Source: Stylophora pistillata
Taxonomy: Eukaryota
NCBI RefSeq assembly: GCF_002571385.2
Contig: NW_019217997.1
Location: 321,567 to 385,566, forward strand
Reading direction: 5' to 3'
DNA length: 64,000 nucleotides
Program-made: the position numbers and the translations under genes
Shown: positions 49,775 to 55,397 of the stretch, in pieces
Position numbering within the stretch: position 1 is the first letter of the stretch
Layout of the letters: each line of letters starts with the position of its first letter
Notes under the pieces: generated by a model
Databases searched by the model: none
Told to the model about the DNA's origin: nothing
The model's input: the letters and a program-made list of their open reading frames with translations, nothing else

Positions 49775-52700
49775 CTAATTATGAACTCCAGAGCCTCCAG
49801 AACCCTCTTCGTCATCATCATCAGTCCACTCTACATCTTCAGTTTGTTCGAAGTAGTCTGCGAGTTCAAGGACGTCTGGAAGATCTTCAGTTTCTGGATC
49901 TGAAGCATCGGTATCTGGAAACTCGCCTCCAGCACCTAGACTGCCTTCGGTACCTACAATCGTTTTCAAAGAATCTTCAATATCATCCACATTATAATCA
50001 TAATTTGAATCTGCAATTTTGTTTGGATCACGTTGGGCTCATTAGTAAGTTTACTTTCTAATTTTAGAATGATTATCCATGATAGGTTTCATGGGGCTTA
50101 CCGTCACTGTCGACAGATTCATTACCATCACTGTCTCGCCTGTCAGCTGCTTCACCGTCATCCAACTCATCTTTAGCACAAAGAGAAGCATCAGTATCCC
50201 ATTAATCCTGCTGTTAATCACCATAATACGTTCCACGGGGCTTACCTTCATTGTCGCTGAATTCATTATCATCATAATCCCACCATTCATCTTCGTCATC
50301 GTCATCCAACTCACCTGTAGCATAAATAGACTCGTCAATATCATCTAAATTTTGTTGTGAATGATCATGATAAGTTTCATGGGGCTTACCTTCGCTATCG
50401 ATGAGTTGGTTTTCATCATCGTCCTGCCATTCATCTTCGTCATCGCCATCCAACTCACCTTTAGCACAAGAAGAGTCCTTAGTATCATTTTCATCTTGCT
50501 TTGAATTACCTTGATGAGTATAATAGGGTTTACCTTCACTGTCGCTGAATTCATCATCATCATTGTCCCGCCATTCATCTTCGTTATCGTCATCCAAGCC
50601 ATCTTTAGCAAAAAGAGACTTCTCAGTACCATCGTAAATCTTCTACGAATCACCACAATCAGTTTCAAATGGCTTACCTTCGCTATGGACAGCTTCATAG
50701 TCATCACCTTCTTTCCAGTCATCTTCTTCAATGTCATCCAGCTCACCTTTAGCACAAAAGGTCCGTAGTATCATTTTAATTCTGCTGCAAACCTCCAAGA
50801 TAAGTTTCATGGGGCTTACCTTCACTATCGCTGAATTCATTATCAACATTTTCCCGCCATTCATCTTCGTCATCGTCATCCAACTCACCTTTCACAAAAG
50901 GAGAGTTCTCAGTAGCATCATAACTCTGCTATGAATCACGATGTTAAGTTTCATGGGTTTACCTTTACTGTCGATAGCTTCATTGTCATCTCTTTCTTTC
51001 CACTCGTCCTCTTTGTTGTCATCCAGCTCACCTTTAGCACAAGAAGAGTCCTTAGCATAATTTTGCATTCTGCTGTGAACCCCCGTCATAAGTTCCATTG
51101 GGCCTACCTTCACTATCGTTGGATTCATTATCATCATTCCACTCATCTTCGTCATCGTCATCCAACTCACCTTTAGCACCAAGAGAATCGTTAATATACT
51201 CTTAATGTTGCTGTGAATCACCTTGATAAGTTCCACGGGGCTTACCTTCACTATCTCTGATTTCATTATCATCATTGTCCCGCCACTCATCTTCGTCATC
51301 GTCATCCAACTCCCCTTTAGCAAAGAAAAAGAGTTCCCAGTAGCATCAAAACTTTGTTACGAATCACCATGATGAGTTGCATGGGCTTACCTTCACTATC
51401 GACAGCTTTATAGTCATCACCTTTCCACTCATCTTCTTCATTGTCATCCACCTCACCTTTGGCACAAAGAGAATTCTTAATATCTTCTTAATTTTCCAGT
51501 GAAGCAACATGATGTGTTCCATGGGGCTTACCATCGCTATTGCTGAATTCATTGTCATCATTGTCCCGCCATTTATCTTCATCATCGTCATCCAACTCGC
51601 CTTTAGCACAAGAAGAGTCCTTAGTATCTATTTAATCATACTATGAACTTCCAAGAAAAGTTTTACGGAGTTTACCTTCACTCTTGTTGGATTCATTATC
51701 ATCATTCCACTTATGTTCTTCATCTTCATCCAACTCACCTTTAGCACAAAAAGAGTCGTTGGTATCATCTAATTCTGCTATGAATCACCCTGATAAGTCT
51801 CATGGTGCTTACCTTCACTATCGTTAGCTTCATTGTCATCACCGTCTTTCCAATCATATTCTTCATTGTCATCCTGCTCACCTTTAGCATGAGAAGAGTC
51901 CTTAGTATCATTTCAATTCTGGTGTGGACCTCCATTATAAGTTTCATGGGGCTTACCTTCACTATCGTTGGATTCATTATCATCATTCCACTCATCTTCT
52001 TTAACGTCATCCAACTCACCTTTAGCACAAAGAGGATCGTTAATATCCTATTAATTTTTCTCTGTATCAACATAATAAGTTCCATGGGCCTTACTTTCAC
52101 TATTGCTGAAATCATTATCATCATAGTCCCACCATTTATCTTCGTCATCATCATCCAACTCACTTTTAGAAAAAAGAGCGTTCCCAGTTGCATCATAACT
52201 CTGATATGAATCACCAGGATGAGTTTCACGGGCTTACCTTCTCTATCGACATCTTTATAGTCATCACCTTTCCACTCATCTTCTTCATTGTCATCCAGCT
52301 CACCTTTAGTACAAGAAGAGTCCTTAGTATCATTTTAATTCTGTTGTGAACCTTTAAGGTGAGTCTCACGCGGCTAACCTTCACTATCGCTGAATTCCTT
52401 GTCATCATTGTCCCACCATTCATCTTCGCCATCGTCATTCAGCTCACCTTCAGCGCAAAAAAGTCCTTAGTATCTATGTAACTATGCTGAAAACCTCCAA
52501 GATAAGTTTTACGGGGTTTACCTTCACTCTTGTTGGGTTCATTATCATCTTTCCACTCATCTTCGTCATCTTCATCCAACTCACCTTAACCACAAAGAGA
52601 GTCATTAGTATTATCTTAATTGTGCTCTGAATCACCCTGATAAGTTTCATGGGGCTTACCTTCACTATCGACAGCTTCATAGTCATCATCGTCTTTCCAC

Positions 52701-55397
52701 TCATCTTTCTCATTGTCATCTAGCTCACCTTTAGCACAAGAAGAGTCCTTAGTATCATTTCAATTCCGGTGTAAACCTTCATTATGAGTTTCATGGGGCT
52801 TACCCTCACTATCGTTGATTTCATTGTCATCACTCCACTCATCTTCTTTACCGTCAGCCAACTCACCTTTACCACAAAAAGAAAATCGTTAATCTCGTCT
52901 TAATTTTGCCGCGAATCACAATGATAAGTTTCACGGGGCTTACCTTTGCTATCGCTCAGTTCGTTTTCATCCTCGTCCTGCCATTCATCTTCGACATCGT
53001 CATCCCACTCACCTTTAGCCCAACAACAGTCCTTAGTATCATTCTAATCTTGCTGCGAATCACTTTGATAAGAATAATGGAGCCTACCTTCACTATTGCT
53101 GAATTCATTATCATCGTTGTCCCGCCACTCATCTTCGTCATCGTCATCCAGCTCACCTTCAGTACAAAGAGAGTCGTAAGCATCATCTTAATTTTGCTGT
53201 GAATCACCTTGGCAAGTTTCATGGGGCTTACCTTCACCATCGATAGCTTCATTATCATCGCCGTCTTTCCACTCATCGTTTTCGTTGTCATTCAATTTAC
53301 CTTTAGCGCAAGAAGAGTCCTTACTATCATTGTAAGCTGTGAATCACCATAATCACCTTTACCTTTATCGTCGTCATAAAAATTTTCGTGAACTTAACTA
53401 TGTGTTACCATAATTAATAAGTTAGACACTAGTATCATCCTCATTCTGGTATAAAACTTCAGTCTCGTGATAGGTACCTTCCGAATTAAGAGCTTCATCA
53501 ATATCTGCCGATTCATAGGATGATCCTGACGACTCTCTAAATTCTGAGGGTATTTTTAAAATTCAACGATCGACCTATCCATGTCGCCTTCATTCCAAAC
53601 CGAATTCACGGAGTCAAAGGGTGTCACCTTTGTTATCGAGATTGTTATTAGTATCATCTTAATCTCGATATGAATCTTCAGACTTTCGGGGCCTACCTTC
53701 ATTATCGAAAACGTAATCAGAATCATTGTCTTTCCACTCAGAATCTTCAGAGCGATGAGAACGACGATGACCTTTAGTATCGACTGATTCATCGTGAGTA
53801 TCATCCGCATTTCGATCCCAATCTTTGTTATCGATGTCATCTTCAATATCACGAGAATAGTAGGCATCATTTTGTTTCTGATCTGAATTACCACTGTCTT
53901 CGGCCTCATATACAGAGTACACAGACTCATTTATATCGTCGCTCTCGTCTGAGTCGTCCGTATCTTGTGGGTCGGCTCCATATCCAAGGGTGTCGTCAGC
54001 GTTAAAATCTTTTGTAAGATCATCCACATTCGGACTTGCGTGATTATCTCCGTAACTGAAGGCTCTAAAACGTTCCTTGTCACTTTGATCATCGTCATTC
54101 TGCTCAGACCTGGTGTTAATGTAATCATCGTGGAAAGGAAAACCCGCCATGCTATCCACCTTTTCTCCAGAAGAGCTTCGAATAAGATGCTCGTCGGCAT
54201 CATAACCAATTTCAACTTGATCGTAATTGGGCCCATCTTTCACGTACCTGAGCAACGAGTAATCATTTAGGAATTCGGGATCTTCCTCGACGGCGACTGG
54301 TTCCCCGTAAGGAGAACGCAACCTGGCCGCAAAGCTATCATCATAAATGGCCTCACGAGAGTCCCTGTCATGGATTAAAGTTTCGCTGTACTTAACTTGC
54401 CCCACTTTGGTGAAATCATGGTCTTCAGCATCGATTTCTTTCCCATCGCGTTCATTAAACTTTTCGGGATACCCCGTGTGCCCTTTCTCTTTCTCGTAGT
54501 CAGTTTCTTCATCAGAATATTCGTAGTTTTCTCGATAGGTACGCCAGTTTCCGTTAAGCCCAGTATCTTCAATCATCTGATCATCAAAAACATGGTCGCG
54601 TTTGAGGGGATTACTGACTGGGTCAGTTTCCACACTGATAGATTCATGCATGTAAGGTGGTTGATGAGAAAAAGACTGATCCTCAGAAGGTTCATCAATC
54701 TTCTCTTCGTCTGTAATTTGCTCTTTATCAATAGATCTATAGTGACCAGTATCGACTTGTTCTTCATGGGATCTTGTTTTACCGAGACTATCATCTCGAT
54801 CCTCACTTGCTTTGTACGCTCCTTCTGTGTCGAGGGCGATTTTGTCAGGAGGTTGTTTGATGTCCTGTATGGCTCCTGTATAGAGCAACAGAAATCTTTG
54901 TAAGAATGGAGATAATTATGAAAGCTTTCTATCGAGATCAAAACTGACGTCATCAGAATGTAGAAGACTGTTGACTGATTTTTCCTTTCCATCTTAAGTC
55001 CAGTGTCCAGCCATACGTAGCGGATTGTTATTCTCAATCCTATCGTTACTCTTTGAAACCTTTGATGCATCATCATTGAGAATTGACTTATCCTGAGCTT
55101 AAGTATAATTTGGTTAACGCGCCTAAAACTAAAAAACTCACGGGCATAACTATAGTAGATCACAAACTAAATGATTTAGAATCACAATGCTAAAACACGT
55201 ATGTGCGCATAGAACTCTGTTAATCTGTTGGTCAGTGACGCGACAAGACGGCATTCTCGGTTGGCAGATTAAGTAAGGCATCCCGAGAATGTTTACCTAC
55301 CATCACTCAATAGTGGTCTTAATCTTGGAATGGGCCGAGCATTGGCTCCCTGTTGTGCGAACACAACCAAGAACACAATCCCGACCCACAATTTCAT
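49775..55397 (-). CDS. Secreted, extremely Asp/Glu-rich protein (coral acid-rich or skeletal-matrix-like candidate), ~1050 aa, ~28-29 exons
   Basis: Signal-peptide exon 55301-55397 (MKLWVGIVFLVVFAQQGANA-RP). Further exons ~55017-55097, 53697-54875, 53478-53543, 53363-53392, then 23 repeat micro-exons at 50102-53300 (consensus GELDDDDEDEWRDNDDNEFSDSE) and a last exon 49775-50010. All introns are phase 1 GT-AG. Function is inferred from composition only. Confidence 0.8.
50102..53300 (-). repeat. Tandem array of 23 ~144-bp exon+intron units with a 6-unit higher-order period
   Basis: The plus-strand landmarks GGGCTTACCTTCAC and CAACTCACCTTTAGCAC recur every ~137-145 bp. Confidence 0.95.

What the first reader, a model, noticed from the sequence alone, without database searches (positions are those of the whole stretch)
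50102..53300. Micro-exon/intron tandem array that looks like introns forming from coding repeats in a secreted acidic protein
Seen: 23 tandem units. The acidic halves are always 63, 66 or 69 nt (3n, phase 1-1) and I found no stops in them. The 22 spacers are 73-77 nt: 8 are not multiples of 3 (73, 74, 76, 76, 74, 74, 74, 77) and several others contain in-frame stops. Spacers begin GTAAGC/GTAAAC/GTAGGC, usually have a branchpoint-like ACTAA/TTAAC, and end in a pyrimidine-rich tract plus CTAAAG. Where a spacer is still 75 nt and open it translates as acidic protein (GKPHETYHDHSQQNLDDIDESIYAT; GKPYYTHQGNSKQDENDTKDSSCAK). Inference: an ancestral 48-codon coding repeat with AG|GT sites had one half turned into an intron, and the exon-intron unit was then amplified, giving ~22 paralogous introns in one gene. 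This fits the intronization and tandem-duplication models of intron gain. ORF-based annotation would call the region a broken pseudogene.
Basis: partly seen in the sequence, partly recalled or inferred. Interest (0 to 1): 0.9.

Follow-up and report, generated by a model that had tools for sequence, protein, structure and literature searches.

The report
Spliced micro-exon array in coral acidic protein
A coral gene for a secreted, very acidic protein contains 23 tandem copies of a small exon-plus-short-intron cassette that really are spliced; this looks like ordinary cassette duplication in an already annotated gene, and the idea that the introns were born from coding sequence stays unproven.

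Summary
On the minus strand, 53300-50102 carries 23 exons of 63, 66 or 69 nt (phase 1-1, no stops). They are separated by 22 GT..AG spacers of 73-77 nt: 8 are not multiples of 3, 12 more have in-phase stops, and 2 are open.

PolyA RNA contigs join the exons exactly at these sites. This includes four non-3n spacers, one open spacer, and the 396-nt and 148-nt flanking introns.

The gene is Stylophora pistillata RefSeq XP_022794478.1 ("protein PFC0760c-like isoform X9"), already modelled as spliced, so annotation did not miss it.

The same 69+75 cassette occurs in two other places: a second Stylophora locus, and TARA Pacific coral scaffolds from a related genus. The positional orthologue there has at least 67 copies. 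In every array the spacers are intron-like and most carry the same in-phase TAA, so the two open spacers are secondary, not relics. Units cluster by locus, which points to lineage-specific cassette amplification.

Coding ancestry of the intron rests on weak hints only: a 46-nt in-phase match in exon 2 and a mild codon-usage signal. I found no intron-to-exon homology and no intron-free relative.

Verdict: a real, ordinary tandem exon-intron cassette array. Intronization is possible (about 0.25) but undemonstrated.

The parts
55301..55397 (-). Exon 1 coding part: start codon at 55397 and a hydrophobic signal-peptide-like N-terminus. It ends in phase 1, with the donor GT at 55300.
   Evidence: Translation matches residues 1-33 of P0001. 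The signal peptide is judged by eye only.
53697..54875 (-). Exon 2, 1179 nt, phase 1-1. Non-repetitive acidic region with no Pfam domain.
   Evidence: ORF. Aligns to P0001 residues 30-425 at 99% identity. RNA contig 20 of run X3 covers 53694-54554. No Pfam hit.
53848..53893 (-). Coding stretch inside exon 2 that weakly resembles the core of the intron family (model positions 23-68). It is in the same phase and sits directly upstream of two exon-type stretches (53840-53774 and 53749-53697).
   Evidence: nhmmer score 12.7 bits, reached by 1 of 400 codon-shuffled versions of exon 2.
53301..53696 (-). 396-nt intron. It begins and ends with intron-family sequence and holds decayed cassette units in between.
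   Evidence: nhmmer hits at 53695-53644, 53461-53427 and 53353-53301. RNA contig 20 (963 nt = 861 + 69 + 33) implies its removal, and polyA depth is 0 over 53374-53569.
50102..53300 (-). The array: 23 micro-exons (63, 66 or 69 nt) alternating with 22 introns (73-77 nt). A six-unit higher-order repeat is superimposed.
   Evidence: Eleven of the 22 introns have direct GT..AG joints in polyA RNA contigs.
52095..52163 (-). Probable dead exon: the upstream intron ends AA instead of AG, and the exon's own last base before its donor has changed.
   Evidence: The exon is absent from P0001, and no RNA joint was listed for it.
50459..50533 (-). 75-nt intron that happens to be open in phase. It is spliced out in polyA RNA.
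   Evidence: Joint 50456>50532 with the cut shifted +2.
50315..50389 (-). Second 75-nt intron that is open in phase. Its acceptor is used in an RNA joint.
   Evidence: Joint 50312>51244 with the cut shifted +2 uses this acceptor. Retention was not tested.
49954..50101 (-). Last intron, 148 nt. Its first 60 nt or so belong to the intron family.
   Evidence: nhmmer hit 50101-50039. RNA joint 49950>50099 with the cut shifted +3.
49775..49953 (-). Terminal coding exon, entered in phase 1, with the stop codon at 49775-49777.
   Evidence: ORF. Matches the C-terminus of P0001. Covered by RNA contig 17.

Best explanation
This is the repeat region of a real, expressed, lineage-restricted coral gene (Stylophora pistillata, RefSeq 'protein PFC0760c-like'). 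The gene encodes a protein with a signal-peptide-like N-terminus and more than 50% Asp+Glu in the repeats. The array was built by repeated tandem duplication (unequal crossing-over) of a 144-nt cassette made of one phase 1-1 exon of about 69 nt plus one intron of about 75 nt. Each duplication copied an existing intron, which is why the gene holds about 22 paralogous introns.

Shown: selection keeps exon lengths in multiples of 3 and exon coding (dN/dS about 0.33). The introns keep their splice signals and an overall length near 75 nt, but accept 1-2 nt indels and stops.

Because every exon is symmetric, units can be gained, lost, killed or skipped without breaking the frame. That fits the variable copy number between genera (23 versus at least 67 units) and the several mRNA isoforms.

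Inferred: the protein is secreted, disordered and cation-binding. Its role (skeletal matrix, mucus or other) is not known.
For: Repeat anatomy. All 22 introns match one profile at E 1e-15 to 1e-21, and all exons match another. PolyA RNA contigs carry GT..AG joints for 11 array introns, including ones of 74, 74, 76 and 77 nt, and for both flanking introns. RefSeq protein XP_022794478.1 joins 15 of the same exons at the same borders. Indels are 3 or 6 nt only in exons and 1-2 nt in introns. Exon dN/dS is about 0.33, and the second codon position is the most conserved in exons but not in introns. Identity peaks at lags 3 and 6, and nearest-neighbour units lie 6 apart. The same cassette occurs at a second locus of this genome and in related-coral scaffolds: L015/L016, and L022, the positional orthologue with 67 exon and 68 intron copies. 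Every unit's nearest relative lies in its own array.
Against: The RNA evidence comes from assembled contigs of one run plus an automated RefSeq model, not raw or long reads; the one raw-read run laid nothing. Some long joints (skipping 931 and 2057 nt, going back 774 nt) may be assembly chimeras among similar exons. Intron copies are only slightly more diverged than exon copies (72% versus 78% identity). Their divergence is below the exon synonymous estimate, so pure neutrality of the introns is not shown. The origin of the first intron is not explained by duplication alone.
Confidence: 0.85

Rival explanations
1. One reading: an ancestral all-coding 48-codon repeat had its second half turned into an intron (intronization), and the resulting exon-intron unit was then amplified. 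This differs from the best explanation only in where the founding intron came from.
For: Read in phase, the pan-array intron consensus has a single stop and hydrophilic, protein-like content. Scored with the gene's own codon usage, it gets +3.3 bits in phase against -10.7 and -33.5 in the other frames, and -15 +/- 7 for shuffles (P about 0.005). A 46-nt stretch of exon 2 (53893-53848) matches the intron profile in the same phase, just upstream of exon-type sequence, and only 1 of 400 codon-shuffled controls reaches that score. Both borders are AG|GT.
Against: The in-phase TAA is the majority state in all three well-sampled arrays, so the last common ancestor of all copies was already non-coding. 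The open spacers are scattered and derived: 2 of 22 here, 7 of 44 in L022, 1 of 15 in L015. Intron substitutions show no codon-position pattern. Ordinary intron-1 windows reach similar codon-usage scores of 2.8 and 7.2. No relative with an unspliced repeat was found, and the other genus has the same introns. The one open spacer whose own removal was seen (50459-50533) is spliced out.
Confidence: 0.25
2. Exonization in the opposite direction: the intron-like stretch in exon 2 is a former array intron that lost its donor and was absorbed into the exon, and the neighbouring exon-type units fused by intron loss. The intron family was never coding.
For: The 3' end of exon 2 reads as intron-like, then exon-type, then exon-type, with an exon-exon-like junction between the last two. 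Cassette units at the 5' edge of the array are visibly decaying inside the 396-nt intron. The same fused arrangement is present in the paralogue's short exon (P0002/P0004), so it is old.
Against: It does not explain the in-phase codon-usage signal of the intron consensus. The match itself is weak. The direction of change cannot be set without an outgroup.
Confidence: 0.15
3. The array is a decayed pseudogene or one continuous ORF broken by assembly errors, and the splice-site look is accidental.
For: A continuous reading is broken by stops and frameshifts. One DNA contig differs by a single T in one spacer (51769).
Against: PolyA RNA contigs lack the spacers at exact GT..AG borders. The frame runs from exon 2 through all the exons into the terminal ORF. 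A RefSeq model exists. Exons are under purifying selection. DNA contigs of run X15 agree with the window wherever they are listed as covering it, apart from a single T at 51769; the listed pieces cover only parts of the array.
Confidence: 0.02
4. The cassette is tuned for recursive or stochastic exon removal. Seventeen of 22 exons start GTGAG[TC], so each exon-exon junction rebuilds a 5' splice site. That would allow already-joined exons to be removed and yield proteins of variable repeat number.
For: Exon starts are GTGAGT x10 and GTGAGC x7, conserved in the other arrays as well. RefSeq lists at least nine isoforms by name, and isoform X9 skips 8 exons. RNA joints skip 6 and 14 exons at canonical borders.
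Against: GT-GAG is also simply Gly-Glu in a Gly-Glu-Leu-Asp repeat. Exon skipping needs no recursion. The long joints may be assembly chimeras; a joint that goes back 774 nt shows such artefacts or copy-number variants do occur. No lariat or intermediate data were available.
Confidence: 0.1

Closest known systems
Intragenic tandem exon (exon-intron cassette) duplication in repeat-protein genes, for example collagen 54-bp exons, nebulin/titin and mucin-type arrays (from general knowledge)
   Same: Head-to-tail copies of an exon together with its intron. The exons are symmetric, so copy number can change in frame. The introns are paralogues of one another. There is higher-order repeat structure and copy number differs between lineages.
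   Different: Here the introns are unusually short and uniform (73-77 nt) and the exons are 63-69 nt. The protein is a lineage-restricted polyacidic secreted protein with no known domain, and the array reaches at least 67 units in a sister genus.
Intron gain by tandem genomic duplication of an AGGT-containing exonic segment (Rogers model; PMC3265369, PMC4974935)
   Same: AG|GT at both intron borders, and tandem duplication is the driving process.
   Different: In that model the new intron is a copy of exon sequence and the mRNA is unchanged. Here the intron type shows no similarity to the exon type, and each duplication adds a new exon to the mRNA.
Intronization of coding sequence (from general knowledge)
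   Same: The spacers read in phase look mildly protein-like, and one coding stretch of exon 2 resembles them.
   Different: No relative with the sequence as a constitutive coding repeat was found. The ancestral copy already carried an in-phase stop. No retention was seen in polyA contigs.
Schistosome micro-exon genes (MEGs; PMC4350168)
   Same: Secreted products, runs of short symmetric exons, and isoform variety by exon skipping.
   Different: From general knowledge, MEG exons are much shorter (about 6-36 nt) and are not tandem copies of one cassette with conserved introns. There is no sequence relationship.
Coral acid-rich skeletal proteins (CARP/SAARP; from general knowledge)
   Same: Signal-peptide-like N-terminus and extreme Asp/Glu content (38.6% overall, 53% in the repeats, pI about 4), in a stony coral.
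   Different: No homology was tested or shown. No Pfam domain was found. No paper in the searched library links this protein to the skeleton.

Membership tests
Tandem exon-intron cassette duplication | Head-to-tail units, each holding one exon and one intron | tested here: met
   Period 144 nt, 22.9 copies. All 22 units align end to end.
Tandem exon-intron cassette duplication | Symmetric exons whose lengths keep the reading frame | tested here: met
   All 23 exons are 63, 66 or 69 nt and phase 1-1 with no stops. The frame continues into the terminal ORF.
Tandem exon-intron cassette duplication | The introns of the units are homologous to each other | tested here: met
   One profile matches all 22 introns at E 7e-21 to 1e-15.
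Tandem exon-intron cassette duplication | The units are actually spliced in mRNA | tested here: met
   GT..AG joints in polyA RNA contigs for 11 array introns and both flanking introns. The RefSeq protein uses the same borders.
Intron gain by tandem duplication of an AGGT exonic segment | The new intron is a duplicate of adjacent exon sequence | tested here: not met
   Intron consensus against exon consensus scores no better than shuffles (368 of 1000 shuffles score as high). Profile searches in both directions gave no hit.
Intron gain by tandem duplication of an AGGT exonic segment | AG|GT at both boundaries | tested here: met
   Exons end GAAG in 16 of 22 and are followed by GTAAGC-type donors. 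Introns end AAAG and are followed by GTGAG.
Intronization | The homologous sequence is constitutive coding sequence in an orthologue or paralogue | tested here: inconclusive
   The only match is a 46-nt in-phase stretch in exon 2 (12.7 bits, reached by 1 of 400 codon shuffles). The orthologous and paralogous arrays all carry the sequence as intron-like spacers.
Intronization | Residual coding signature in the intron | tested here: inconclusive
   The in-phase codon-usage score is above shuffles (P 0.005) but within the range of ordinary intron windows. There is no codon-position pattern of substitution. The ancestral copy has an in-phase TAA.
Intronization | A young intron is often retained in part of the transcripts | tested here: inconclusive
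   The open spacer 50459-50533 is removed in polyA contigs. Contigs cannot exclude rare retention, and the raw-read run laid no reads.
Schistosome-type micro-exon genes | Most of the coding region is made of exons of about 6-36 nt | tested here: not met
   The exons here are 63-69 nt, alongside a 1179-nt exon.
Coral acid-rich skeletal matrix proteins | Detected in the skeletal proteome, or homologous to CARP/SAARP | not tested
Paper searches found no mention. Only the composition is similar.

The most novel reading that the evidence does not exclude
The 75-nt intron family, now present in well over 100 copies across two paralogous genes and two coral genera, may descend from sequence that once coded for part of the same acidic protein. 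That would mean a single intronization event followed by massive cassette amplification, with a surviving coding relative at 53893-53848 in exon 2.
Probability: 0.2. Interest if true: 0.6.

Novelty: new member of a known kind. Interest (0 to 1): 0.3.

Why it matters
The array is a clean, RNA-supported example of how one short intron can be multiplied into dozens of paralogous introns by tandem duplication of an exon-intron cassette. The cassette expanded independently in related corals: 23 units here and at least 67 in the orthologue. It is useful as an annotation case, because ORF finders fail on it while splice-aware models succeed. It is also a candidate locus for studying repeat-number variation in a secreted polyacidic coral protein. 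It does not, on present evidence, document de novo intron birth from coding sequence. That would have been the exciting part.

Tried and rejected
- Raw RNA reads (run X24) laid nothing on the stretch, so starts, strand and rare intron retention could not be tested.
- Pfam on exon 2 and on the terminal exon gave no family. An earlier attempt used the wrong frame.
- A whole-library HMMER search with exon 2 found only three clusters: the RefSeq model itself, the paralogue's short ORF, and a distant N-terminal relative (P0003). The P0003 locus, L021, has no array.
- Word-indexed protein searches with P0001 and with exon 2 found nothing further. These are limited by the tool's length window, so longer or shorter relatives could be missed.
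- I tested whether the intron type and the exon type are diverged copies of one 72-nt unit; there was no support.
- I considered swapping the roles (spacers as exons, because the acidic halves start GTGAG and end AAG). The RNA joints and the stops and frameshifts in the spacers rule this out.
- I considered using the second Stylophora locus (C167) as evidence that spacers can be coding. Several of its spacers are open in phase, but its exons carry stops and 1-nt indels and its large exon is broken, so it looks decayed and proves nothing.
- Paper searches for this protein found nothing relevant.
- Exons were handled by reference and the database protein P0001 was used instead.
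Full report
**What is there**

The gene lies on the minus strand. Tandem Repeats Finder reports a 144-nt period with 22.9 copies at 50077-53330, and a higher-order period near 425 nt. 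I cut the minus strand at donor-like sites and aligned the 22 full units. Each unit is one spacer that begins GTAAGC (14 of 22) and ends CTAAAG (14 of 22), followed by one acidic coding piece.

The 23 coding pieces have these minus-strand coordinates:
- 53300-53232, 53156-53088, 53012-52944, 52866-52804, 52728-52660, 52584-52522
- 52447-52379, 52303-52238, 52163-52095, 52019-51957, 51881-51813, 51738-51676
- 51600-51532, 51456-51391, 51314-51246, 51170-51108, 51031-50963, 50888-50820
- 50746-50678, 50602-50534, 50458-50390, 50314-50246, 50170-50102

All are 63, 66 or 69 nt, phase 1-1 and free of stops.

The 22 spacers are 73-77 nt:
- Eight are not multiples of 3.
- Twelve of the fourteen 75-nt spacers have in-phase stops.
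- Two (50459-50533 and 50315-50389) are open.

A branchpoint-like motif sits 15-36 nt before the 3' end in 17 of 22. The only additions are the strand and one defective unit: exon 52163-52095 is preceded by AA instead of AG.

**Is it spliced?**

Yes. I laid assembled contigs of a polyA RNA-seq run (X3, labelled coral metagenome) on 49650-55500. They show joints whose skipped parts have CT..AC ends on the plus strand, which is GT..AG on the minus strand.

- Eleven of the array spacers have such joints. These include spacers of 74, 74, 76 and 77 nt and the open spacer 50459-50533.
- The 148-nt last intron (50101-49954) is also joined across.
- One 963-nt contig is accounted for as 861 nt of the large exon, plus the 69-nt first micro-exon, plus 33 nt of the next. 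This implies removal of the 396-nt intron 53696-53301. PolyA depth is zero over 53374-53569.
- Contigs of a random-primed metatranscriptome (X1) and of what is probably a DNA run (X15) carry the unspliced genomic form. The X15 pieces listed cover parts of the array and agree with the window there, apart from single-base differences and one extra T at 51769.
- The raw-read run gave no reads, so starts, strand and rare retention remain untested.
- Three long or backward joints (skipping 931 and 2057 nt, going back 774 nt) use canonical exon borders. They could be exon skipping, copy-number variants in the sampled colony, or assembly chimeras among similar exons.

**What gene is it?**

A HMMER search of 1.8 billion representative proteins with the large exon found three clusters. 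The best is an 822-aa protein, 99% identical, which the sources name XP_022794478.1, "protein PFC0760c-like isoform X9", Stylophora pistillata.

- It starts with a hydrophobic signal-peptide-like segment encoded at 55397-55301.
- It continues through exon 2 (54875-53697).
- It then joins 15 of the 23 micro-exons at exactly the borders I had parsed, and ends in the terminal exon 49953-49775.

So the locus is already annotated as a spliced, multi-isoform gene. The protein has no Pfam domain. It is 38.6% Asp+Glu overall (53% in the repeats), has no cysteine, and has a calculated pI near 4. No paper in the searchable library mentions it.

**How the array evolves**

- Exon copies are 78% identical on average and intron copies 72%.
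- Identity peaks at lags 3 and 6, and most units have their closest relative six units away. Blocks of six cassettes were therefore duplicated.
- Among exon copies, dN/dS is about 0.33 and second codon positions are the most conserved.
- The spacers show no pseudo-codon pattern (0.29, 0.27, 0.25). They accept 1-2 nt indels, whereas exons show only 3- or 6-nt indels.
- Intron divergence (about 0.36-0.44) is lower than the exon synonymous estimate (0.65). With so few synonymous sites, all of them two-fold, I do not read this as proof of constraint beyond splice signals.

**Relatives**

Within this genome the cassette occurs at only one other place, contig C167. This count is a lower bound. That copy has broken exons, a broken large exon and an eight-fold 52-nt tandem of the intron's 3' part, so it looks decayed.

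TARA Pacific coral metagenome scaffolds hold two further arrays. I infer they come from Pocillopora, because the flanks are 84-89% identical to the window and TARA sampled that genus; this is an inference, not a tool result.

- L015/L016 is the counterpart of C167. It has intact 69-nt exons and spacers of 73-76 nt.
- L022 is the positional orthologue of the window gene. Its upstream blocks are collinear with the window, but the 1.5 kb holding exon 2 is absent. It carries 67 exon-type and 68 intron-type copies over 10 kb.
- In L022, 44 complete GT..AG spacers measure 74 (6), 75 (31), 76 (5) and 87 (2) nt. Seven are open in phase.
- Every unit's nearest relative lies in its own array, so the arrays expanded or were homogenised separately after the lineages split.

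**Test of the intronization idea**

Against:
- The in-phase stop at pseudo-codon 15 (TAA) is the majority state in the window array (10 TAA plus 3 other stops of 22), in L022 (27 plus 2 of 44) and in L015 (8 plus 2 of 15). The ancestor of all visible copies was therefore closed, and the open spacers are secondary rather than still coding-like.
- No relative has an unspliced repeat.
- The intron type shows no similarity to the exon type. This also fails the defining feature of the tandem-duplication model of intron birth (PMC3265369, PMC4974935).

For, weakly:
- A profile of 84 intron copies hits exon 2 at 53893-53848 with 12.7 bits. The hit is in the same codon phase and lies directly upstream of exon-type sequence. 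Only 1 of 400 codon-shuffled versions of exon 2 reaches that score.
- The intron consensus scores +3.3 bits in phase with the gene's own codon usage, against -15 +/- 7 for shuffles. However, ordinary intron-1 windows reach 2.8 and 7.2.

These hints fit intronization. They fit equally well the reverse event, in which exon 2 captured an array intron. The fused arrangement is shared with the paralogue, so the direction cannot be set with the data at hand.

**Verdict**

The mechanism that explains the data is tandem duplication of an exon-plus-intron cassette in a lineage-restricted, secreted polyacidic protein gene that RefSeq already models. The origin of the founding intron from coding sequence is possible; I put it near 0.2-0.25, but it is not demonstrated, and the specific evidence offered for it does not hold. 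I rate this a new member of a known kind, of modest interest.

Noticed in passing
L022:5322-15543 (TARA Pacific scaffold; positional orthologue): The orthologous array in the related coral has at least 67 exon-type and 68 intron-type copies, about three times the Stylophora number, and some neighbouring units are 100% identical. The 1.5 kb that holds exon 2 in the window (about 55042-53499) has no counterpart there.
   Followed up: partly
G000:C167 about 297600-302000 (L013 5700-10000, minus strand): A second, decayed-looking copy of the gene. Its exon-type units carry stops and 1-nt indels and its large exon is broken. A 52-nt unit made from the 3' two-thirds of the intron is repeated 8.1 times at 98% identity (L013 9126-9544).
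   Followed up: partly
window 51592 and 52136: Contigs of runs X1 and X15 leave the window sequence at these two points with the same foreign letters. This suggests a structural variant (replacement or insertion) inside the array in other colonies. A joint that goes back 774 nt in polyA contigs may be a related copy-number variant or an assembly chimera.
   Followed up: no
window 46654-47525 and L022:14875-15064: The repeated element upstream of the gene, noted by the scan as a tRNA-like multimer, matches at 79-80% identity a stretch that interrupts the array in the related coral. It behaves like a mobile short element.
   Followed up: no
window 50246-53156, exon starts: Seventeen of 22 exons begin GTGAGT or GTGAGC directly after the acceptor, so spliced junctions rebuild a 5' splice site. 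The same is true in L015 and L022. RefSeq isoform X9 skips 8 exons.
   Followed up: partly
window 51769: A DNA contig of run X15 has one extra T here. That would make the 74-nt intron 51739-51812 a 75-nt one. It is either a polymorphism or an assembly slip, and it has no effect on the spliced frame.
   Followed up: no
L021:10001-10783: A distant relative of the N-terminal part of exon 2 (P0003, 38% identity over about 110 residues) in another coral assembly. It has an internal duplication and no cassette array nearby.
   Followed up: partly
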